Positions 40,026 through 52,584 of a stretch of 64,000 nt of DNA are shown one piece after another. The notes beneath the pieces are model-generated. The model had not been told where the DNA came from. It was given only the letters and a program-made list of their open reading frames with translations, and did not search any database. This DNA is from Epithemia pelagica (lineage: Eukaryota > Protista > Bacillariophyta), in the NCBI GenBank assembly GCA_946965045.2, contig OX337242.1, positions 2,480,001 through 2,544,000 of the forward strand, given 5' to 3'. The number at the start of each line of letters is the position of its first letter. Positions within the stretch are counted from its first letter, which is position 1. The translations under genes and the position numbers were made by a program.

Positions 40026-43000
40026 CTATGTTTCACACTCATCTTCTGCAACTAGTTCGTCTTCATCATCATCATTCATAGTACCCAAAGACGCGTCGTC
40101 GTCCTCCTCGTCATCGTCACTGTCATCGTAGTAGTCCTCGTCATCGTCATCGTCACTATCCTCATCTTCCTCAGGGTCTACAACAAGTGATGTCCCATGT
40201 GTCATCTGCTCTACATCGTCAATTGGTGTCCATGTACCAGGTTCAAAAAAATCCCAGTCATCGAGATCTATAATATCTGCCAATTTTTCTACCGATTGTT
40301 CGTCTGATTTGTTTTCCTCTCTTGGCTGTTCCGCACCTCCATTGCTAGCTCCATTGTCCGTTGGTGACTGTCCAGCAGTAACAGTGACTTCCATTGATTG
40401 TCCGGCACCTCCATTCTCATCTCTTGACTGCTCAGCACCTCCATTCTCATTCGTCGACTGCTCAGCACCTCCATTCTCATTCGTCGACTGCTCAGCACCT
40501 CCATTCTCATCTCTTGACTGCTCAGCACCTCCATTCTCAATCGTCGACTGCTCAGCACCTCCATTCTCATCTCTTGACTGCCCGGCTCCTCCACTTTCAT
40601 TCCCTGTCTGTTGACCACCTCCATCGTCTTGTATACCCGGAATTCTGCGACAAAATTCCATTGTACCCTTATTCTTTGCAACCCAGGTTTTCCTTGCCAG
40701 CGCATTTTCCTCGCTGCAATTTGCATTACCTTCTGTTATATCACTGTATTCGTATCGACACATGAAAACCATGCGTCGTTGCAACCATCTCGCCATTGGT
40801 TCTAGTCTGGACCTCCTACCCTTTCCCCTATTTGTACTACCACCCCTTTGTGTTCTGGAAAAATAGAACGTCTTAAATAAACTATTGAATGCTGTAACAG
40901 TGTAGGTGAGTAACCATTTTCAACAAACAAGAGAACCTCTTTCGCTTTCGCAGGCTACTACTTACCTTCCCACCCCTGTTGAGCGTGGGATGACAGGTTG
41001 CGCCAGTGGATCAGGTATTCCATTACGTGACCACTACCTATCAAGTGTGCGTAGTTGGTTATCCCATTCTCACCACACAAATCCACCCAAGTTGCAAAAA
41101 ACTCATCCGCCTTGCGCTGATAGTCAAAAATCTCACTGTCTGTCATGTTGGTTTTCTTGTTAAGTCGTTCCATGGAAATGACATAGTCGGCTACACACTG
41201 CTTCCACTTGACTCGTTTCTCTGGGTTTGCGATACATATATCTACCAGTTCATCAAACTTGGGCAACATTCTTCGGATGCGGACGTTGTCCATAGTGATG
41301 GTTCCAAGTTTACGCTTCTTCTTCTCATACGGTGCTTTCCACTGCGTCGGCATATCACTCGTTCCCAATATGGACTGGTTCATACATTTTTGGACTCGCT
41401 TGATGAAGTGGTTACATCTCTTTATTTCTGAATTGTCATATTCTTCAGGCATCCAATCGAACTCTTTGACCTTTGCACTTGCCAGACCGTGTCGCAAACA
41501 CATGGTAAGAATCTTGATTCCCATGCGATTCTCCATATGGAGAATGCATGGGACCGTGTCCATCATATAGACAATTGCGGTAGCAGTCTTGGACTGCTTA
41601 TAATCATCTAACACCTTCTTTGCTTGGTAGTAAATCCACTCTTTGACATGGTGGGCCTTGAGTCGTCGTTGTCGTTGCTCTAGTGTACCATGCACATCTA
41701 GTTCTCTAACCACCAGATCATTGGTTATGAACCTCGCATATTCCAGACGCTTGGCAACATCGGCTTTGCCTAGATCAAAATGGATGGACTTGATGTTCCC
41801 CTTCTGAACTTTGGTTGGGTCCATCCTGGGGTCCTCTTGCATAATCAACTCGGAATCACCCCATATATCAGTTAGACTCTCGTAGATGCTAGGCATCTCC
41901 TTGACGAAGTGGTCCACTTCCTTTTGTAGACTGTTTACATGAGCCCTTGTACACATCTTGTGATGTCTACATACCCAGTTTGTTTTTCTGGAATGTCCTA
42001 GTTGCGAGCACAGGCTGCAGTCTTCGACACGTCCTGTGGGGAGATGGAGTTCTCCACTTCGTACAGTACATTTCGAACAAGGGAAGTTAACTTGTTGAGC
42101 GGCCCCACCACGCCCAAGTAGCTTCCACTCGCAACTCATATCGCAATTAGTGCATATTTTGAGCGGCCATACTCCGAATTTCGTGGGAAGTACTTTTACG
42201 GCAGCTTCACCGATCTCTTCGATCATGTTCCGAAAGATCGATCGCACTAAGCCCTTGCTCTCTGGACGACAAACACACACAACCGGAAAACAACTGTTAC
42301 GTGATTGGGCAAGAGGGTTGGACATGTCGTTGAACTTCAGCCCTCCCAGTGTATGGCTTAAGTTTTTAGTGAAAAGAGCGCCGTCCAAACGCTGTGCCAA
42401 CTGGATGGGCCGCCAACGAGCGTCTCCGTACAGACAATTGCCTGCCACTAATATTCCTGCCATAACATCGGCTGCCCGGAAGGCAAATCCTTCCGACCCA
42501 TCAGTCTTGTGCCGGAAAAGTCGGTAGGGGCAGAGAAGACTCCCAAACTTCTCGACTTCTTTGGCTACATCCTGGATACAAGAACTACTTGGGATAAGTG
42601 TGTGTGTATTAGCAACTCCATTGCTTTCCACTTGTCGTAGGACTTCAATGCCGCCAAGGTTTAGGACGCCACCTGCGAGATCCATTTTCCGTAGAATGTT
42701 AAACAGTGTGAAGACGTAATCGCGTACATATTTACGAAATACACCATATGCATTCTCGAACATGAGCCCATTGTGTATGGATTTGTCAAGGCACAGTTGT
42801 GCCACGTCTCGGAAGAATTCTCCTGCTGCTCTACTCGTGTCATCCATCCTACTGGTCCTTGATACGAGGATTTCTCGGATATGTGACACCAGTTTTTCAC
42901 AGTCCTTTATGTCGTAGCAAGAGGCGGGGAGATCAATCTCTTTGCTCGTCGCTTTTGTTTCCGCGTCTTTATCCCTCCAATACCGAAGGTCATCTGATCT

Positions 43001-44245
43001 ATTCTTCAGCTTTCTTCTACAATCGGTCAAATCGTCGGTTACTTTCTTCAGGGACTTGCGATAGTCAGACACAGCTTGATGTGCTTGTAGCAGATCCTGT
43101 TCCAAACAATGGATCTGATTGTGGAGACGTGTGATTTCTTCGTTGTCTTCTTGTGTCGAATCCATGTTGGCAGATTCGTCAGCGTTATCTAGAGTTTCAT
43201 TACTACTAAGGTACGTCCTATTTCTTGTCTCTTCAGTTGTTGATGAGTCGCCTTGCTCATCTCTGGACTGCTGACTCTCTGCATTTTCAAATGGGGGCAG
43301 GTCATCTAATTCTTCATTGTCGACATCAAATGACTCGGCTTCATCGACTGCATGGTCTCGAGAATCATGAGCATAAAAGCTGTAATGGCTGAGGGGGTCC
43401 TGGAAAAGAGGTAAGTTTAACAGAAACTGTGGAGTTTCTTTCTTGTTTGCAGCGTCGTTGTATTTGTCTTCATCAATCTCACTAATGAGGTCGTCATCGT
43501 CTTGAGGAACATTCCCTTGGGTTGGGTTCTTAGTTTCATCCTTGCCTTGTGGATGCTGGTACAGAATGCTTTCGAGAGTGGATGATGGAGGTGGAGGTTT
43601 GATCCTTGATCGTTTCCTCCTCTGTCGTTTCTTGCGTTTGCGAGTCGTTCTCAGGGACTTGTCGCCATTGCATGGTCGACAAAACAAATCAATTGGCGGT
43701 GGTTTTGGAGAGTTCTTCTTCTTTGGGTCGATGTATGTGGGATGCCAGAAATTTGTGTGCTTGGATCTACAGGTGTATCGACCGCCTATTGCCTTGCGGT
43801 TTATCTTGTGAGAAGGACGGAAACCAGACTCGTCGTCTGCCTTTTTGCATCGGCTACAGAAGGTGTATCCTGGGTAGCGTTCCTCGCGGTCTCTGCCATA
43901 AACAGAGCAGGGGACATGGTCTTCGTCCATAAAATCAAGAACAATCTGGGCAATCCGCTTTCTCTCAACAGAGTTTTTTTCACATGTGATATTCGATTCT
44001 TTGCGTCGGGTCCTTGTCTGTTTGTTGGGAGATGGAAGGAGCTTCTGGGCTTCCTCCGCTTCGCGTTTTGCCAGTTCGGCGAGAATTTCTTCTTCCGTCT
44101 TGAACCTGCTATCCTTGGCACCTCCATCGTTGGAATCTGATGCCGTCTCTTTTTCTCGAAGGCGACGAGACTTCCGAGAACCTTCAGTGGAAGCGGTGGG
44201 TTGCCTCTTCTTTGCGTAGTTCTTCGGGGGCTTCTGTTTTGGCAT
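40026..44245 (-). CDS. RAG1-core/Transib-like DDE transposase (~1380 aa); join(44245..40966,40891..40026)
   Basis: RLDGA (D), NCDMS (D), PCSKC, PCILH..R, NYAHLIGSGH and QQGWE|AFN (E) parallel RAG1 D600/D708/C727,C730/H937,H942/E962. A 74-nt GTAAGT..CAG intron fuses the two ORFs in frame. Confidence 0.82.
40405..40590. repeat. 30-bp tandem repeat (about 6 units) encoding NGGAEQS(R/T)(D/N/I)E in the transposase tail
   Basis: Period-30 units starting ccattctca at 40411, 40441, 40471, 40501, 40531 and 40561. Confidence 0.9.
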
Positions 44246-45013
44246 TCTACGAGGATAGGATAAGTAATAATACAAGTATTACTCGACTCAAATGGCGCTG
44301 TCCTCATTGTTTCATCGTCGACTTCTCTCGGTTGGAGTTCGTACTTCCGATGACTCAACTACGATTGAAAGGCGATTAGGTTGTTATATGTTATTCATTG
44401 ATGTATATAAATTAATGCTGTAGAGGTGTGCACGTGTGAGTGGGTGTGCTGTGCTCGCATTTTTTCCCCAAAATTTTGTTTGTGTGTGAAAGGTGCCAAT
44501 TGGACCCGTTGTATCTCGACGAATATTACCTACTTTTGTCATCGGACAGAAACGTAACATTGTGTTGTATTTAAAGTGTCTTGGACCGTTGGCCGATGAC
44601 AAAGTTAGTGGGTACTGCATTGGCAGTTTAGAACCAAAATCAGATGGTCGTTGGGAATGAAATTTTGGTGGTTATATTTAACAAAGGATGAGCCACTGTT
44701 TGGGTCATAGTTGGTGGGGGTTTCTGATATGACATCTTGGTGGATCTTGGACGTTGGGGTCTCGCCACGCGCGCACAATATGCACAGAATGCTGCTATTG
44801 AGAGGTCCGCAGAAACAAGGACAGCAGACAGACTAATCCTTAACCTTAACGTACCAACTCCACCGCCTGTCACACCTTTGTACACGCCTGTCACACCGTG
44901 TACACGCCTAAGTAATCGTCAAAGAAATAACCGTTCTCTTTCAAATCTGAAAGTCTTCAGATCGGCATTGGAAGATATTTCGCTATTGCATTCAATTCAT
45001 TGAGTATCTAGCC

Positions 45014-48000
45014 ATGGACGACAACAACGACGATGGAATGCTACATGATCAAATTCATCAACAGTTGGATCGATACTTCAACTCCTTAGAAACAGAATGG
45101 ACTTCTCCAATGACCTTTGCAATGCACACTGGTGATGATTGCATATGCAACCAAACAACAAGTTGCTTCGACATTTGTGCTTTCATTGGATGGGGCCCTC
45201 AAGCGGAGCACGTCAAAGGGAACTTCGCATATTTCTGTCAAACAGCATACCCTCCATGTACAAACCCAAGCAATATATTCGATGAAGATGGGTCCTTTTT
45301 GAAGCTAAAAGCTGATATCTCCAAAACTGCGATGTGTGGAGGATTTTCTATTGTCTCCAATGGTACATCACACAAAAAGGCGTTGGCCACTCGCAAGGCT
45401 TTCCCTAAAGGAAGTGAACCTCCGTACATGCAACGTACCTTCACTTGTGACCGCTACCGCCGCTATACCAACAAACGGAAGCGAGTATCTGTGGGAGACC
45501 CCAACATGGAACACCGTAAGGTTTCACTTCATAATGACAAGAAAGGCAACAGTAGGGGGGTTGATGGCAAAAAGGGACCAAGAAAAAACGTGACAACACG
45601 TGCATTACAAAATGAAGACACATGCTCCTTTCGCTTTGATATATTTGTCGATATGTATGGCTTTTATGTCAAGCGTAGTTCTGGATCTGTCACCCACTGT
45701 AATCATATGAAGCGGTTGCCTGCGGATATTCCAATAAAACTTCGTCATTTGACGTCAGAACAGAGACGGAGTACAGCTGAACTTGGTAAAGCCCTGACTC
45801 GTCCAGCTAATGGTCGAAACTTCTTCCATGCAAATCACGATCTCACACTGACTCCACAACAACTTCGGTATGCATTTCACAACTTTGCATCAGATTCAAA
45901 ATATCACTACAATGGTATTGAAGTAGGTGCTGGAGCAATTGTTGAATGGTTGCGATCAACACCAGACATAAGTTACTGCATATGGGGGGCAAAACCTCCT
46001 AATGTTGTAAACGCTCAGGTCCAGCGACAAGCTGGCTTAATCTTCAGTGAAAACCAGGTCGATTGTGGAGTGAGACATATATCAGACCTTACTAATTTTT
46101 GTCAAGAAGTTCTTCAAGAATACACTGCTGATATGGAAAAAGAAAGGCAACAGTAGGGGGGTTGATGGCAAAAAGGGACCAAGAAAAAACGTGACAACAC
46201 GTGCATTACAAAATGAAGACACATGCTCCTTTCGCTTTGATATATTTGTCGATATGTATGGCTTTTATGTCAAGCGTAGTTCTGGATCTGTCACCCACTG
46301 TAATCATATGAAGCGGTTGCCTGCGGATATCCAATAAAACTTCGTCATTTGACGTCAGAACAGAGACGGCGTACAGCTGAACTTGGTAAAGCCCTGACTC
46401 GTCCAGCTAATGGTCGAAACTTCTTCCATGCAAATCACGATCTCACACTGACTCCACAACAACTTCGGTATGCATTTCACAACTTTGCATCAGATTCAAA
46501 ATATCACTACAATGGTATTGAAGTAGGTGCTGGAGCAATTGTTGAATGGTTGCGATCAACACCAGACATAAGTTACTGCATATGGGGGGCAAAACCTCCT
46601 AATGTTGTAAACGCTCAGGTCCAGCGACAAGCTGGCTTAATCTTCAGTGAAAACCAGGTCGATTGTGGAGTGAGACATATATCAGACCTTACTAATTTTT
46701 GTCAAGAAGTTCTTCAAGAATACACTGCTGATATGGAAAATTTAGGTCTACAAGAAAACCAGCATTTCTTCATCGCTTGTGCATGGATCACCAACAAGGA
46801 AAAGAGAATGTTCCGCTTATTCCCTCATGTCCTCAAGATTGATGTTACAGAGGGAACAAACAAGGAGTCACGACCACTTCTTACAGTTTCTATCCGATCC
46901 ACCTTTGGGAAATATATTATAATTCTGCGGATGTTTCTACGTGATCAGCGTCAGGGAACTTTTCGATGGGTATTTTCCTTTGCCCTGCCAAAACTTCTTG
47001 GAGATCAATGGACATCCCAAATTCAAAGTGTCATAACCGATGGTGACTCACATGAGATTGTTGAACTTGAAGAGGCCTGTCGTCGTTACATGCCAAATTG
47101 CTTTCGTGTTCGTTGTGGGTGGCATATTATTCATAAGGGATGGTTACGACATTGCTCATTCGGGAATGCCATTGACTCAACGTACATTTGACAATACAAA
47201 CTGTTTTGCTACACTGTGAAACAGTGGTGTTACACGTTCATGTACCCAAGATATTGTGAAAATGAAAATGAGTTGGTGATATCAAAGTGCCTGCTCTTGG
47301 CCTACATTCATTCACGGCAGGTTCGAAAGTTCCTTCCAGACAACTTACGTTGGAACGTGCAAAACTTTTTGATTGGGTATGTTTTTTTTTCACGATCGAC
47401 AACTTGTGCACTATTACAGACAAAATCTTCGTCATTATGAAGAGTGCACTAACAGCAGTCACGAAGGTACAAACTGTGGTATCAAAGAGCACTCAGCTCC
47501 AGTTTTACCAGGTGGAACAGTCCAAGGCAATGCAGCGTTGTTGAAGTTTCAATCAGACATTCTAATCAATTCACAATTACGTCTCGCAGCAACGCGAGTC
47601 GAAGCTAAATCTGTTTGGATGAAGGAGAATCTCCTACCACTCAACGGAATGGTAACTGAATTGTGCCATGATTTAGTCCACAATGCATGGACGCGCCGTG
47701 ACAAATATGCAATTCGACGTGATAGATCATCACCATGGAACTGGCATGTCAAAGTGGTAGATACCAACTGTTTGGATACAGAGAAGAAACGCCTTCATCC
47801 AGTATGGCATCGTACAAGAACGGTAACATTGGATTCTTCCGGGCGCTTATTGTGTTCCTGCGGTACGTTTCAAAGGTGTGGTTACCCATGTTCGCATCAA
47901 GCCGCAGTACTGTGTTTTGAGTGCCGGGACTACCAAGGCTTCACCCATCATGATGTGAGTATTGTGTGGTGGAAGAAATACATTTTCTTTGGCTTTCGCA

Positions 48001-48800
48001 ATGCGAACAATGATACTGAGAATGCTCTAAATGATTGTTTGAAAGAACTATTAACAAATGATCTTACTGGACCAAAGTTACCATTTGACACGGGACCAAC
48101 ATGGTGTGAGAAAGAGGAATGGTGCTACTGCCCAACCGGTTTTGATTTGCCAGATTGGGAAACTGAAGCATGCCTGAATTATTCGCAAGAACGAATAACA
48201 AGAGTCGTCACAACATTTTCTGGTTTCTTTAACTACACTGAAAATGTATCTTTGGACCAAGACAACTTGACACAGGAGTCGTTTACTGCTCCGGATGGGA
48301 TAAATCCACAATATGGGCGCTCAATGCCTTCACTTCAAGGAGTCAGGGATAATCCATGCCCAAGTGATAGTGAATCTCTCCAAGACGACAATATATCTCA
48401 TGATGAGTCTAATCGTGGCCTTGAAAACGACACAATTGACAATGTTGATGAAGGAATTGGGGACATATTTGTTGATGATACTGATGATGCAACTGATCTC
48501 CACACAAAATGTGATGAGGTGTATGGCGAAGCATTAGCGCCCAATTCATTTGTTCAACTAATGACAGAGGAGTTGAACGAAATCAAGAAACTGTGCCGTT
48601 CAGCAAGTTACAATAATAATGGAGTGGATTTGATGAAACCACTTGTTTGTCTGCGTGAATTAACAAGATCAATCCGCAAGGACATGGCTACTCGAAGTAA
48701 TCATAATCATGGACAAGAGTGGGTTTCTTCGAATTCAGAGCATTCCCGCCATTGCCGTAGATTCCGCGGTGCTAGATTGGGGTTAACGGAATTTGATTGA
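45014..48800 (+). pseudogene. MULE transposase with WRKY/FAR1-like N-terminus and SWIM finger, disrupted
   Basis: KIDVTEGTN (D), ITDGD (D), RCGWH, TNSSHEGTN (E), CSCG..GYPCSH. Lesions: 601-bp internal duplication, in-frame TGA at 47189-47191, +1 T in the T9 run at 47382-47390. Confidence 0.88.
45540..46740 (+). repeat. Near-perfect 601/600-bp tandem duplication inside the MULE transposase
   Basis: 45540-46140 vs 46141-46740; one substitution and one 1-bp indel seen. Confidence 0.92.
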
Positions 48801-48842
48801 ATAAAGTAACAATTGATCAGTTAATAAATTTTATTTTACCTA
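48799..48842. terminator. Putative bidirectional polyadenylation region between the convergent MULE transposase and TET/JBP genes
   Basis: AATAAA twice on + and TTTATT (AATAAA on -) within 45 bp. Confidence 0.45.
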
Positions 48843-48845
48843 TAT

Positions 48846-50114
48846 TCAGTTATCCTTCTTTTGTAATTGGTTCAAAATACACTCTTCGATTCCAGTGAGG
48901 GGGGTGGTATTGTCGTTTTTTCCAACAACCGCTGTCTTGAGGTAGAACGATATGCAAAAAACATCCTCACTGGTAACCTTCTTCGAAACACAGTGATAGA
49001 CTTGGGGGTTGAAGAACAAAATGTCCATGTTTCGAAGGGCAACTGCATGTCCACATTGTGGAAAGACAAAATAGCAAAGAATATTGTTTCCAACTGAATC
49101 CGGTTCAGTGGCCATGGTTATCACTGCAGAATAACCAAAGTCTTGGTCGGTGTGTGCACCAAGAAATACATTCCTTCCAAAAGCGATTGACGAGAAAAAT
49201 GTGCTGTCGTTGCTCCCGTCTGAGAAAGTTGGTATACCTTGAACAGCCTTGGTAATGGAATAGCTCTGTATTATAGACCAGTGCATCCACTCGCAAAATA
49301 AATGCTCGAATCGTCGCACCAATTTCATCAATGCCTGCTTATCTTTGCCTGTCATGAGTTTCTTTTTGGAATCAACAATTCCGTGTCGACCTTGATTTGC
49401 ATGTTTGCCAATGGTTACATACGAAGATTGATGTGATTCCATTCCGACATATCGAAACTTCCCTCGTTGTTGGAAAGAACATGCAGATTCCAATGATTCA
49501 AAGACCGAAATTACTTTCTTCTGTACTGGGAACGATAAATGATTCTGTCCTGGTACCTTGAGAAACACAGGCAGTGTTGAATCACTGGGTTGATATAGAG
49601 CTCCACCATCAGTATCGGTAGTATGGAACTTAGAAAGAGACACAAATATCGGTCGGACGGTTTTGGTGCCACTGCCTTCAAAGTATTCGTCGTCTGTACT
49701 ATCACTTTTGAATGTGACTGTGTTCCTCATCAAGTAGTCTGGTGTCATTTGTGAAGCCAATGGAGCCTCGGGCACTTTCTCAAGAGTATCTTGTTTGTTA
49801 TTCTTTCTCTTGTTTCTCTGTCTGTTGCATTTCCTGAAAGGTGTAGCACATCCTTGAATGATAGCTTCTGAGACCTGTGTTCGACGTGAAGAATTATTTC
49901 TTGACTTGTATGTATGAACAACTGAAGAAACATCAATGTGTTGTCGATCTTGTAGATGCGAAAGTATTCTTCCCATGGTGGGTATTGTTGCCAGCCCCGC
50001 CCTTCTTATAGAGGCCTCCCCTAAAGGAGGACCTCCCAAAGGCAAAGAGGTAGATCCATTGTTGTCAGGTTGCTGACTCAGGGTCAAACAGCCTCTCTTG
50101 ACTGGTTTGGACAT
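48846..50114 (-). CDS. TET/JBP-like Fe(II) dioxygenase, MULE cargo
   Basis: FSSIAFGRNVFLGAHTDQD (HxD), YFVFPQCGHAVALRNMDILFFNPQVYHCVS (distal H) and ISFYLK parallel the TET/JBP double-stranded beta-helix pattern; intact ORF. Confidence 0.72.
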   Translation of the reverse strand: MSKPVKRGCLTLSQQPDNNGSTSLPLGGPPLGEASIRRAGLATIPTMGRILSHLQDRQHIDVSSVVHTYKSRNNSSRRTQVSEAIIQGCATPFRKCNRQRNKRKNNKQDTLEKVPEAPLASQMTPDYLMRNTVTFKSDSTDDEYFEGSGTKTVRPIFVSLSKFHTTDTDGGALYQPSDSTLPVFLKVPGQNHLSFPVQKKVISVFESLESACSFQQRGKFRYVGMESHQSSYVTIGKHANQGRHGIVDSKKKLMTGKDKQALMKLVRRFEHLFCEWMHWSIIQSYSITKAVQGIPTFSDGSNDSTFFSSIAFGRNVFLGAHTDQDFGYSAVITMATEPDSVGNNILCYFVFPQCGHAVALRNMDILFFNPQVYHCVSKKVTSEDVFCISFYLKTAVVGKNDNTTPLTGIEECILNQLQKKDN

Positions 50115-50135
50115 TTCAATACTCAAGCAACCAAT

Positions 50136-50483
50136 GAGAGCTTCCAAACAGTATCAGCCTTCCCAAAAGAGCAGGATGGAGAAGCCCCCAATTGCCAGGG
50201 CTGTATCTTCTGATGGAAATGAGATAAAAGGACGATCAGGGATGATTTAGAATTGTCTTGGCATGGACCAGGTTGCCCAAGTGTCAGAATGGGCGTAGCA
50301 CTTACGGTTCCAAAGAGAGCTTCCAAACAGTATCAGCCTTCCCAAAAGAGCAGGATGGAGAAGCCCCCAATTGCCAGGGCTGTATCTTCTGATGGAAATG
50401 AGATAAATGAACGATCAGGGATGATTTAGAATTGTCTTGGCATGGACCAGGTTGCCCAAGTGTCAGAATGGGCGTAGCACTTA
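50136..50483. repeat. 169-bp direct duplication with a 10-bp spacer, upstream of the TET/JBP gene
   Basis: 50136-50304 vs 50315-50483 (offset 179), about 2 differences. Confidence 0.9.
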
Positions 50484-50937
50484 CTCTCCAGAAGTTGTGG
50501 TTATTGGAATGAAAGGATTGCTTTGGTGAAGCTGTTGCTGCTGATACAGATGCTGGTGAAGCTTGTGCTGCTGCTGTTGTTGATGAGAAGTTGAGGTGTG
50601 TATTGCTGTGGTGTGGAGAAAAGGAGGGATAGGACAGGATTTTTCTTCAATGTGGGTGGCAGTTGGTCTGCGCAAGTCGGCCTGGTTGGCAACCGTGCAC
50701 AGTTTTGGCTACATTAAGGTTAAGGATTAGTCTGTCTGCTGTCCTTGTTTCTGCGGACCTCTAATGGCGAATTATCATAATCCCCATCACTCTAAGAGCA
50801 CACATTTAGCTAGTAGACCAGTAACACCAATCCAACCTAACGCTCACTCACACCATACAGCATACAGCCGGTCATCACAAAACAGCACTTACCATTCATC
50901 ATTCTCCCTATTTGTTGTTGAAGAAGAAATCAACACC

Positions 50938-52584
50938 ATGTCGATCATCCACCACAAAAGTGACAGTGACAACTCCATTCTTCACTTTACCTCGACCTGT
51001 GGCATACAGTCCTCCCTGATCTGCTGTCAGTCCTACGCTTATTTCATCGCAGACTGTCTGACATCGTGCATATTATCACCACCCAAAGAGCAATTACAAT
51101 CCATTCTTACCGCCACAGCTTCCTGGTTGATCCGCCAACAGCAATGGATTGATGTTTCTTCTTCAATCCAATATGAAAATAATCATCCGTGTATCATTTT
51201 TCAATACACCTTCGAAGAAGTCCTTCATCAAGTCAGTTCTCATATGCTTCAGTGGCTGAATGGAGAAGACGATGAAAACCTTGTATCCATTTCAGAAAGC
51301 ATGGACCCCGCCAACATCATACTTGAATTGAAATGCATACCTCAGTTTGCCGTTTGTGAATGCAAAGGTTGTTTGGAATGCACATCGTTCGTCGTTGGAG
51401 AGACAAATGATTTTCCCAAAGACTCCATTACCGACCTGATTCTCTTTTGGATCCAACGCAACCAAGCTCATTTTCTTGTAACGGACAACAATTCTGGTAA
51501 ATCAATGGAGCCTAAGTCACTGGAGAGTATATTTCCACTTCTATCCCAATATATTGGACGGCAAATCGATACCACAAGGGTATCTCAAGACGCAAGAATC
51601 TCCATGGCTTCCAACAACAAGTTCAGTCGCCACTCCAGTCCGTCTCGACATAAATATCAAACTCGACAACAAAATCATCTACTATCTCAGGACATTTTAC
51701 TGAGTTCCAAATCACGGACAAAGCCAAACTACGATGACGGTCGTCGTTTCAAACACGGAGACCCATTCAAAATATCCCCATGCAGAATTTCCTGTCCCAA
51801 TCTACCTCTATGTCCTAGTGATTCAATCATTGCTGACAGAGTGACTCTCATTGAAGATCTGAAAGAATTCCACGAGATAGCCAAGATGTCTGGGCTACAT
51901 TCTCCAAGGGACGCTTGGGAGGACTGGATGGATTGTGGGGCAACAGACAAGCTTGCCGACAAAGCTTTTATGTGTCTCATTATAATTCTTATGAGCTCCA
52001 GCACCACCGACAGTCAATTGGCGGCATTCATTCCACAAATGTTTTCCAGTGGACTTACATCAGCGGACGGTGTAATAGAGGTATCACAGCGGATTGGAAT
52101 GGATGCCTTTTGTGCCCTCATCTCTCCAGTTGGTCGATTCCACCAAAATGCAGAAAGAATTGTACATGCGGCATCTTATTTTGTTGTCAAACACAAAGGC
52201 CGCATTCCATCTGATATATCCATCCGAGAACTCACCTCTTTATTCGGAATTGGATACAAGACAGCACAGATCATTGTCTCAAGTGCATTCGGTCGAATGG
52301 ACGGAATTCCTTCGGATGTCCACGTCATTCGCTGGTGTGAGGCACTCAAATGGGTGCCACCACTTGCAAATGACGGTCTCCTCTGTTCCAAGTGCATTGA
52401 ACAATGGCTGCCTAAATCCAAATGGCATCTTATCAATCCACTTTTTGGGGCGTTTGGTCAGCTCATTCAAAATCCTGATACACGGCCACCTCTCTTGAGC
52501 CTATTGGAGGAGAAGGCTTCGGATCTGGTGAAATCTGTCTTTCTCAAAATGCTGAAGGCATATGGCAAAAACAAATTCTTCTAA
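50938..52584 (+). CDS. HhH-GPD DNA glycosylase/AP lyase (endonuclease III/NTH-like) with a long unknown N-terminal region; hAT cargo
   Basis: ILMSSSTTD, ELTSLFGIGYKTA (HhH with catalytic K), IPSDVHV (catalytic D), EQWLPKSKW..INPLFGAFGQ; no 4-Cys FeS motif at the C-terminus. Confidence 0.85.
   Translation: MSIIHHKSDSDNSILHFTSTCGIQSSLICCQSYAYFIADCLTSCILSPPKEQLQSILTATASWLIRQQQWIDVSSSIQYENNHPCIIFQYTFEEVLHQVSSHMLQWLNGEDDENLVSISESMDPANIILELKCIPQFAVCECKGCLECTSFVVGETNDFPKDSITDLILFWIQRNQAHFLVTDNNSGKSMEPKSLESIFPLLSQYIGRQIDTTRVSQDARISMASNNKFSRHSSPSRHKYQTRQQNHLLSQDILLSSKSRTKPNYDDGRRFKHGDPFKISPCRISCPNLPLCPSDSIIADRVTLIEDLKEFHEIAKMSGLHSPRDAWEDWMDCGATDKLADKAFMCLIIILMSSSTTDSQLAAFIPQMFSSGLTSADGVIEVSQRIGMDAFCALISPVGRFHQNAERIVHAASYFVVKHKGRIPSDISIRELTSLFGIGYKTAQIIVSSAFGRMDGIPSDVHVIRWCEALKWVPPLANDGLLCSKCIEQWLPKSKWHLINPLFGAFGQLIQNPDTRPPLLSLLEEKASDLVKSVFLKMLKAYGKNKFF

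What the first reader, a model, noticed from the sequence alone, without database searches (positions are those of the whole stretch)
48846..50114. Intact TET/JBP-like dioxygenase carried by a Mutator element, apparently lacking the canonical 2-oxoglutarate Arg
Seen: the HxD (AHTDQD) and distal His (YHCVS) are intact and the ORF is undamaged, while the adjacent transposase has three lesions. The last strand reads DVFCISFYLK where TET/JBP proteins normally have RxSxVxY. Known: TET/JBP enzymes oxidise 5mC or T, and Chlamydomonas CMD1 is a TET homologue that uses ascorbate instead of 2OG. Inference: a TE-encoded 5mC-modifying enzyme, possibly with non-standard cosubstrate chemistry, kept intact after the transposase decayed.
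Basis: partly seen in the sequence, partly recalled or inferred. Interest (0 to 1): 0.87.

Follow-up and report, generated by a model that had tools for sequence, protein, structure and literature searches.

The report
Diatom Mutator transposon carrying TET-like enzyme
A decayed copy of a young Mutator-type jumping gene, probably in a diatom, carries an intact gene for an enzyme folded like the TET/JBP DNA-base oxidases. Its whole family has a hydrophobic residue where those enzymes keep the arginine that holds 2-oxoglutarate, so how it binds its co-substrate is open.

Summary
Window 48846-50114 (-) is an intact 422-aa ORF with HxD (H321/D323) and a distal His (H374). The convergent MULE transposase carries a 600-bp tandem duplication, a CGA>TGA stop and a +1 frameshift.

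A truncated model places K393 on TET2 H1904, NgTET1 H297 and CMD1 R418. The canonical 2OG arginine therefore falls on V385. That position is V or I in 95 of 119 relatives and never Arg or Lys.

The gene lies inside the TIRs of a ~6-kb MULE with copies 97-99.5% identical, two of them with an intact 1061-aa transposase. Two diverged MULE families in the same genome carry paralogues.

Substitutions shared between copies give omega ~0.13. Private ones are near neutral, so this copy's intactness is not evidence of selective retention.

A non-2OG co-substrate remains untested; several conserved basic residues could stand in for the arginine. The HhH-GPD glycosylase neighbour lies outside the element.

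The scan has already followed up other copies of this element in this genome. TET-carrying transposons are published only for fungi, and not for Mutator.

The parts
44792..50770 (.). MULE (Mutator-like) DNA transposon, a decayed copy of about 5.98 kb. The transposase-side terminus is degenerate.
   Evidence: Homology to copies L003-L006 (97.4-99.5% identical) starts and stops at these ends. The consensus terminus is TCGCCATTAGAGGTCC. At 44792-44800 the window reads CTGCTATTG where the consensus has TCGCCATT.
44801..44853 (+). Left terminal inverted repeat (the well-preserved part)
   Evidence: 53-nt arms, 98% complementary, with 0 matches expected by chance.
50710..50770 (-). Right terminal inverted repeat, including the terminal TCGCCATT
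   Evidence: Loose ends of other insertions begin at 50770/50772.
45014..48800 (+). Broken MULE/SWIM transposase, in three ORF pieces (45014-46156, 46349-47191, 47373-48800)
   Evidence: Pfam hits on the pieces: MULE 2e-7, ZSWIM1-3 RNaseH-like 2.5e-9, SWIM 2.7e-6. 93-99% identical to the intact 1061-aa transposase of L003/L005.
45539..46738 (+). 600-bp tandem duplication within the transposase (codons 176-375 occur twice). The junction is out of frame.
   Evidence: D3, D5; a joint that skips 600 in the collapsed contigs.
47189..47191 (+). Nonsense codon TGA; the other copies have CGA (a CpG transition)
   Evidence: (47189 T>C in other copies).
47376..47390 (+). T-run holding one extra T, which causes a +1 frameshift
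   Evidence: (one letter left out at 47382).
48846..50114 (-). Intact TET/JBP-fold Fe(II) dioxygenase gene, 422 aa, convergent with the transposase across a 45-bp spacer
49146..49154 (-). Codons of H321-T-D323, the HxD iron ligands
   Evidence: Invariant in 66/66 relatives.
48993..48995 (-). Codon of H374, the distal iron ligand
   Evidence: Invariant in 66/66 relatives.
48936..48962 (-). Strand VIII, V385-K393. V385 sits at the canonical Arg position, Y391 is the stacking aromatic and K393 is the base-contact position.
   Evidence: In the truncated model, residue 177 (K393) aligns to TET2 1904, NgTET1 297, CMD1 418 and CcTet 393. Conservation.
50131..50484 (.). Two copies of a 179-bp subterminal tandem repeat just upstream of the dioxygenase gene; copy number differs between element copies
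   Evidence: D6. Several copies in L003, L005 and L006. The sister family in L002 shows the same 179-bp spacing.

Best explanation
Window 44792-50770 is a dead copy of a recently active Mutator-like (MULE/SWIM) DNA transposon of a probable diatom. The autonomous form is about 6 kb. It encodes a 1061-aa transposase and, convergent to it, a 422-aa nuclear-type Fe(II) dioxygenase of the TET/JBP fold.

The dioxygenase belongs to a large, unannotated, mostly diatom family. The family keeps the HxD...H iron triad, an invariant Arg close to the TET2 R1261 / CMD1 R244 position, the aromatic residue that stacks on the flipped base (Y391) and a basic base-contact residue (K393). It has replaced the strand-VIII Arg that anchors the distal carboxylate of 2-oxoglutarate with Val or Ile.

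Inferred function: the enzyme oxidises a methylated DNA base, most likely 5mC, on the element itself or genome-wide. This would counter CpG-methylation silencing, as proposed for fungal TET-carrying transposons.

Co-substrate binding must differ from canonical TETs. Either 2OG is held by a relocated basic residue (candidates R361, R/K379), or another co-substrate is used.

Shown: the fold, the motifs, the transposon architecture, copy-level selection and the CpG-decay signature. Inferred: the substrate, anti-silencing role and co-substrate.

For: Active site. H321, D323 and H374 are invariant. R217 is kept in 65/66, Y391 in 64/66 and K393 in 64/66. The end of the truncated model maps K393 onto TET2 H1904, NgTET1 H297, CMD1 R418 and CcTet 393; its start maps R217 onto TET2 1259 and CMD1 242/243. 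In all four solved enzymes the Arg lies 6 residues before the stacking aromatic (PMC7854593, PMC11040006), which puts it on V385. That position holds no R or K in 119 relatives.

Transposon. TIRs. Four further copies at 97.4-99.5% identity, two with an intact transposase. MULE Pfam hits above the gathering cut-off. Paralogous dioxygenases (46% and 43% identical) sit inside TIRs of diverged MULEs whose transposases are 24% and 66% identical.

Selection. Shared substitutions are 4 N: 9 S, omega ~0.13, p = 0.0004. Singletons are 21 N: 8 S, omega ~0.75. Fisher p = 0.018.

Methylation signature. 28 of 95 singleton mutations are transitions at CpG, about 6-fold enriched per site; CpG observed/expected is 0.75.
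Against: Sequence profiles barely see the relationship. Pfam 2OG-FeII_Oxy_6 scores E 0.016 and 15.7 bits against a cut-off of 27. Tet_JBP hits only 2 of 66 members at 0.002. Sequence and profile searches of the PDB find no TET hit at all.

The Asp after HxD is at H+4, whereas TET2, NgTET1 and CMD1 have Asp/Asn at H+5.

This element family has Gln at position 241, where 59/66 relatives have Arg.

There is no evidence of expression: the runs found were DNA assemblies.

No target-site duplication could be found.

Three more distant family members (L007-L009) have no recognisable MULE transposase beside them.

Confidence: 0.72

Rival explanations
1. The enzyme no longer uses 2-oxoglutarate. With Val/Ile and Cys where TET2 has R1896 and S1898, the bottom of the pocket is apolar. 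The enzyme would take another co-substrate, such as ascorbate (as CMD1 does) or a different 2-oxo acid, and might make a base modification other than 5hmC.
For: The Arg position is V or I in 95/119 relatives and never R or K. The i+2 position is C, V or S. The structural register is fixed. There is precedent for a TET homologue that uses vitamin C (PMC7854593).
Against: CMD1 keeps the Arg in sequence and excludes 2OG by other means (Trp358), so loss of the Arg is not the known signature of ascorbate use. Several near-invariant basic residues (R361 64/66, R/K379 62/66) lie on elements next to the pocket and could anchor 2OG. The CcTet paper notes that residues contacting the co-substrate analogue NOG are less conserved among Tet enzymes than the metal ligands (PMC11040006). 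Other 2OG oxygenase subfamilies anchor 2OG from other strands (general knowledge, not tested here).
Confidence: 0.25
2. The dioxygenase is a passive passenger, a host gene captured in the manner of a Pack-MULE, with no role for the element.
For: MULEs often capture host gene fragments (general knowledge). Distant family members L007-L009 show no MULE transposase nearby.
Against: The gene is full length and keeps the same convergent position in three MULE families whose transposases are only 24-66% identical. Substitutions shared between copies show strong purifying selection, omega ~0.13. The catalytic triad is invariant.
Confidence: 0.08
3. The enzyme acts on thymine (as JBP and phage 5mYOX enzymes do, making 5hmU), on 6mA (as CcTet does) or on RNA, rather than on 5mC.
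For: TET/JBP members with T or 6mA activity exist (PMC13229309, PMC11040006, PMC11572971). The base-recognition Asp is shifted by one residue relative to 5mC-specific TETs. One AFDB hit is named thymine dioxygenase.
Against: D325 is kept in 65/66 relatives, and an Asp in that role favours an amino-bearing base: the CMD1 paper argues that thymine O4 cannot bond well with its Asp350 (PMC7854593). The element copies carry a strong CpG-transition signature, which implies that 5mC is present on them.
Confidence: 0.2

Closest known systems
Fungal transposon-encoded TET/JBP dioxygenases ('TET+ transposons': Iyer et al. 2014 as cited, and Kojima 2025, PMC12730594), including the solved relative CcTet
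   Same: A TET/JBP-fold dioxygenase encoded next to the transposase inside the TIRs of a DNA transposon. The elements are multi-copy, and the proposed role is escape from methylation silencing. Pfam's fungal model 2OG-FeII_Oxy_6 is the only Pfam hit.
   Different: The host is a probable diatom, not a fungus. The carrier is a MULE/Mutator, a superfamily absent from the published list (Dileera, Kyakuja, Zisupton, hAT, Harbinger, IS3EU, EnSpm, ESTA, Plavaka, Helitron). The protein scores below every Pfam threshold. CcTet keeps the Arg (R385), whereas this family has Val/Ile there.
Human TET2, Naegleria NgTET1
   Different: There is no Arg at the R1896/R289 position and no Cys-rich zinc sites. The Asp after HxD is at H+4, not H+5. 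Sequence identity is about 11-16%.
Chlamydomonas CMD1 (vitamin-C-dependent 5gmC synthase)
   Different: CMD1 keeps Arg410 in sequence but turns it away, and Trp358 fills the pocket (PMC7854593). Here the Arg itself is replaced, and no equivalent Trp could be identified. Ascorbate use is not shown here.
Other anti-silencing cargo carried by Mutator (MuDR) elements: the anti-silencing protein of plant Vandal elements and the SET histone methyltransferase genes in oomycete MuDR (both as cited in PMC12730594)
   Same: A Mutator-superfamily element that carries a gene acting on its own epigenetic state.
   Different: The cargo has a different fold and a different chemistry.

Membership tests
TET/JBP dioxygenases | Double-stranded beta-helix fold closest to solved TET/JBP members, including the N-terminal extension | tested here: met
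TET/JBP dioxygenases | HxD...H Fe(II) triad | tested here: met
   H321, D323 and H374 are invariant in 66/66 relatives.
TET/JBP dioxygenases | Arg at the start of strand VIII, 6 residues before the stacking aromatic, binding the distal carboxylate of 2OG (TET2 R1896, NgTET1 R289, CcTet R385) | tested here: not met
   The register was fixed with the truncated model. The position is V385: V/I in 58/66 and in 95/119, with no R or K.
TET/JBP dioxygenases | Stacking aromatic and base-contact residue on strand VIII (TET2 Y1902/H1904) | tested here: met
   Y391 and K393 are each kept in 64/66. K393 aligns to H1904, H297, R418 and CcTet 393.
TET/JBP dioxygenases | Arg contacting the metal-proximal carboxylate and the flipped base (TET2 R1261, CMD1 R244) | tested here: inconclusive
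   R217 (65/66) aligns to TET2 1259 and CMD1 242/243, two residues or fewer from the target. The alignment is loose at the model's end.
TET/JBP dioxygenases | Asp/Asn five residues after the HxD His, recognising N4 of cytosine | tested here: inconclusive
   D325 (65/66) is at H+4; H+5 is Phe. No coordinates were available to check the geometry.
TET/JBP dioxygenases | Pfam Tet_JBP or 2OG-FeII_Oxy_6 at the gathering score | tested here: not met
   15.7 bits against a cut-off of 27. Only 2 of 66 members reach E 0.002 for Tet_JBP.
TET/JBP dioxygenases | Oxidation of a 5-methylpyrimidine in nucleic acid | not testable with these tools
   Needs an enzyme assay.
Mutator/MULE DNA transposons | DDE transposase with the MULE domain, often with a SWIM zinc finger | tested here: met
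   Intact copy in L003: MULE 28.7 bits (cut-off 27.6), ZSWIM1-3 RNaseH-like 38.9 bits, SWIM 23.2 bits. Sister element in L001: MULE 54.9 bits.
Mutator/MULE DNA transposons | Terminal inverted repeats | tested here: met
   About 61 nt, with a 53-nt core that is 98% complementary.
Mutator/MULE DNA transposons | Target-site duplication of 8-11 bp | tested here: not met
   The flanks of three complete copies and two sister elements share no direct repeat longer than 4 nt.
CMD1-type ascorbate-dependent TET homologues | Ascorbate as co-substrate, with 2OG excluded | not testable with these tools
   Only the absence of the Arg is shown.

The most novel reading that the evidence does not exclude
A large diatom clade of transposon-borne TET/JBP enzymes has given up canonical 2-oxoglutarate anchoring. 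It would use a different co-substrate, or a relocated binding mode with altered chemistry, and could write a DNA base modification not yet described in diatoms as part of a transposon's counter-defence against methylation silencing.
Probability: 0.2. Interest if true: 0.85.

Novelty: new variant of a known kind. Interest (0 to 1): 0.6.

Why it matters
Transposons that carry their own TET-type enzyme have been described only in fungi, and not in the Mutator superfamily (PMC12730594). This example is a recently mobile case from a probable diatom. It belongs to a family of over a thousand sequence clusters that standard profiles do not recognise.

Diatoms methylate their transposons. Statements about whether diatoms have TET enzymes or 5hmC contradict one another even within a single review (PMC9033121). 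This family is therefore a concrete candidate for active removal or rewriting of 5mC in a major phytoplankton group.

The replacement of the 2OG-anchoring Arg across the whole family also sets up a clean biochemical question about the co-substrates TET-fold enzymes can use.

Tried and rejected
- **Sequence and profile searches of the PDB** with the protein, the 66-member profile and the core-only profile found no TET hit. The fold assignment therefore rests on predicted structure.
- **Expression evidence.** The only runs found were genomic assemblies, with contigs up to 0.5 Mb. They showed other insertion sites and the undamaged consensus, but no transcripts.
- **Target-site duplications** were looked for and not found.
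- **A functional TET-plus-glycosylase module** with the adjacent HhH-GPD gene was rejected. Homology between copies ends at the TIR, and the other copies have unrelated neighbours.
- **Domain fusions in longer family members.** Nothing reached the Pfam cut-offs.
- **Family-wide MULE linkage.** Three distant members on short metagenomic contigs showed no transposase, so linkage is shown only for three families in this genome.
- **Identifying the replacement 2OG anchor.** Model coordinates are not exposed. R361 and R/K379 remain candidates chosen on conservation and approximate position only.
- **Papers that could not be read.** PMC3918813 (Iyer et al. 2014) and PMC2995806 (a reference in PMC12730594, which I take from memory to be the 2009 Aravind-lab TET/JBP prediction paper) are not held. 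I could not check what they say about stramenopiles.

Full report
**1. What is in the sequence**

The minus strand of 48846-50147 is an open frame of 433 aa from a TTG. The ATG version, 48846-50114, is 422 aa and is identical to a called protein, P0001. Residue numbers below follow P0001; add 11 for the 433-aa frame.

A basic cluster at residues 94-108 looks like a nuclear localisation signal (this is inference).

**2. The element around it**

A 53-nt inverted repeat, 98% complementary and with no chance expectation, brackets 44801-50762. Comparison with four other copies from the same assembly (L003-L006, 97.4-99.5% identical) extends the ends. The consensus terminus is TCGCCATTAGAGGTCC, so the window copy spans about 44792-50770. 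Its transposase-side terminus is degenerate.

Loose ends in public DNA assemblies of the same organism show further insertion sites.

L003 and L005 carry an intact 1061-aa transposase convergent with the dioxygenase gene. It scores above the Pfam cut-offs for MULE, the ZSWIM1-3 RNaseH-like domain and SWIM.

The window's transposase is broken in at least three ways:
- a 600-bp tandem duplication (45539-46138 / 46140-46738) with an out-of-frame junction;
- CGA>TGA at 47189;
- an extra T near 47382.

A 179-bp tandem repeat lies upstream of the dioxygenase gene. It has two copies here and more in other copies.

I found no target-site duplication in any complete copy, which is unusual for Mutator.

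The HhH-GPD glycosylase-like gene that begins just past the right TIR is not part of the element. Homology between copies stops at the TIR, and the other copies have unrelated neighbours.

**3. What the protein is**

Sequence methods barely recognise it:
- Pfam 2OG-FeII_Oxy_6 scores E 0.016 and 15.7 bits, against a cut-off of 27.
- Tet_JBP is reached by only 2 of 66 relatives.
- PDB sequence and profile searches find no TET hit.

An exhaustive profile search nevertheless found 1132 clusters at E up to 0.001, and 283 at E up to 1e-30. The Atlas records the nearest clusters as eukaryotic, mainly Bacillariophyta.

With 66 relatives as the alignment, AlphaFold gave a confident model: pLDDT 88.1, pTM 0.85. 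The structural comparisons agree:
- The top 26 Foldseek PDB hits are all CcTet, CMD1, TET2 or NgTET1.
- AlphaFold DB cluster hits are named JBP1/TET or Tet-like oxygenases.

It is not.

**4. The missing arginine**

Published structures give the reference geometry. In each enzyme the aromatic residue that stacks on the flipped base lies 6 residues later (Y1902, F295, F416, F391). In the first three a base-contact residue lies 8 residues later (H1904, H297, R418) (PMC7854593, PMC11040006).

To fix the register without access to coordinates, I folded a piece cut exactly at R217 and K393 (alignment A3; pLDDT 94.8) and read the end points of the structural alignments.
- The last residue, K393, pairs with TET2 1904 in five entries, NgTET1 297 in three, CMD1 418 in five, and CcTet 393.
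- Hence Y391 is the stacking aromatic and V385 occupies the Arg position.
- V385 is V or I in 58 of 66 aligned relatives.
- Among 119 representatives with the YxK motif, the position is V 63, I 32 and never R or K.
- The i+2 position, S1898 in TET2, is C, V or S here.

So the loss is real, and it is a property of the whole family. The first residue of the cut piece, R217 (65/66), pairs with TET2 1259 and CMD1 242/243. That is within two residues of R1261 and R244, the Arg that contacts the metal-proximal carboxylate and the base. That part of the site is probably retained.

**5. What could replace the arginine**

Near-invariant basic residues remain close by:
- R361 (R/K in 64/66), at the end of the strand before the invariant D364;
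- R/K379 (62/66), five residues after the distal His;
- R241 (59/66), which is Gln in all five copies of this element.

In TET2 the bottom of the pocket is formed by R1896 with H1416 and S1898 (PMC9749932). In CcTet, Tyr361 hydrogen-bonds the same carboxylate (PMC11040006). By spacing, the counterpart of those two residues falls at 356-359 here, so R361 would lie on the same strand a little further along. This is inference only, because I could not measure distances.

CMD1 is not a close analogy. It keeps the Arg and blocks the pocket with Trp358 (PMC7854593). I put a non-2OG co-substrate at about 0.2-0.25.

**6. Is the gene cargo of the element, and is it selected?**

Two paralogues in the same genome, P0002 (46% identical) and P0003 (43%), lie in the same convergent position inside the TIRs of other MULEs. 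Those transposases are 24% and 66% identical to this one. The P0003 element shares the TCGCCATT terminus and the 179-bp repeat spacing.

Among the five full-length copies, pairwise pN/pS is 0.23-0.76. Splitting the substitutions:

| Class | N : S | omega | test |
|---|---|---|---|
| Shared between copies | 4 : 9 | ~0.13 | p = 0.0004 against neutrality |
| Private to one copy | 21 : 8 | ~0.75 | not different from neutrality |

The difference between the two classes gives Fisher p = 0.018. This is the usual pattern for a gene needed by the transposing lineage that then decays after insertion.

It follows that the intact ORF in this dead copy is not evidence of retention. With 3-4 lesions in 3186 bp, about 1.2-1.6 would be expected in 1269 bp, so having none has a chance of 0.2-0.3. 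Other copies show the opposite pattern. L003 has an intact transposase but Y232C and G245R at conserved dioxygenase positions. Truncated versions of 167 and 294 aa also exist.

**7. Likely substrate and role**

Singleton mutations among copies are dominated by transitions. 28 of 95 fall on CpG sites, about 6-fold enriched per site, and CpG observed/expected is 0.75. This is the signature of cytosine methylation on the element. The transposase stop codon (CGA>TGA) is itself such an event.

The conserved Asp after HxD favours an amino-bearing base over thymine, by the argument made for CMD1 Asp350 (PMC7854593).

I therefore favour oxidation of 5mC as a counter to methylation silencing, the role proposed for fungal TET-carrying transposons (PMC12730594). 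Thymine, 6mA or RNA remain possible. No expression data could be obtained.

**8. Novelty**

The 2025 survey of transposon-encoded TET/JBP genes lists only fungal hosts and ten transposon lineages, none of them Mutator. It mentions MuDR only for other cargo. I found no paper that links TET/JBP to diatom transposons. A diatom review contradicts itself on whether TETs exist in diatoms.

This scan has already followed up other copies of this element, and of its sister families, in the same genome and reached the same general reading. The missing-Arg point had been noted by first readers elsewhere, but no follow-up was shown. What this report adds:
- the structure-anchored register;
- the family-wide count at the Arg position;
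- the split between shared and private substitutions;
- the rejection of 'retained after decay'.

**Verdict.** This is a real feature and a new variant of a known kind. The co-substrate question is open and testable.

Noticed in passing
window 50131-50484; also L003 6267-7984, L006 6090-7984, L002 8800-9542: The 179-bp subterminal tandem repeat upstream of the dioxygenase gene varies from 2 copies to many between element copies. The diverged sister family keeps the same spacing. The last unit overlaps the 5' extension of the ORF (both begin MEAL...), so the array may contribute 5' exons or promoter units.
   Followed up: partly
window 50938-52584 (+): An HhH-GPD (endonuclease III-like) glycosylase-like ORF (Pfam E 6e-4, below the cut-off) lies head-to-head with the dioxygenase gene, just outside the right TIR. 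The other copies of the MULE lack it, so the pairing is an accident of insertion.
   Followed up: partly
window 44792-44800: The transposase-side terminus of this copy reads CTGCTATTG where the other copies have TCGCCATT. This copy has probably lost a functional end as well as its transposase.
   Followed up: partly
L003-L005 element ends; L001 8512/15329; L002 8388/13993: No target-site duplication flanks any complete copy of three related MULE families. The two bases outside TCGCC...GGCGA are AT or AC on the left and AT or GT on the right, as if they extended the inverted repeat.
   Followed up: partly
L002 12340-13728 and 19212-20600: The P0003 locus holds the same transposase N-terminal half (residues 4-467, 66% identical to the window family's transposase) and the same TIR arm twice, 6.9 kb apart, with a helicase-like gene (Herpes_ori_bp / AAA_30) between them. 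This looks like a nested or duplicated arrangement.
   Followed up: no
window 40958-44275 (-): A 1105-aa ORF with no significant Pfam hit abuts the left end of the MULE. Another first-reader note calls this region a RAG1-like transposon.
   Followed up: no
dioxygenase codon 241 (CAA) in the window copy and in L003-L006: All five copies have Gln where 59 of 66 relatives have Arg. The codon is one CpG transition away from CGA, so the subfamily may have fixed a deamination change at a conserved position and still kept transposing.
   Followed up: partly
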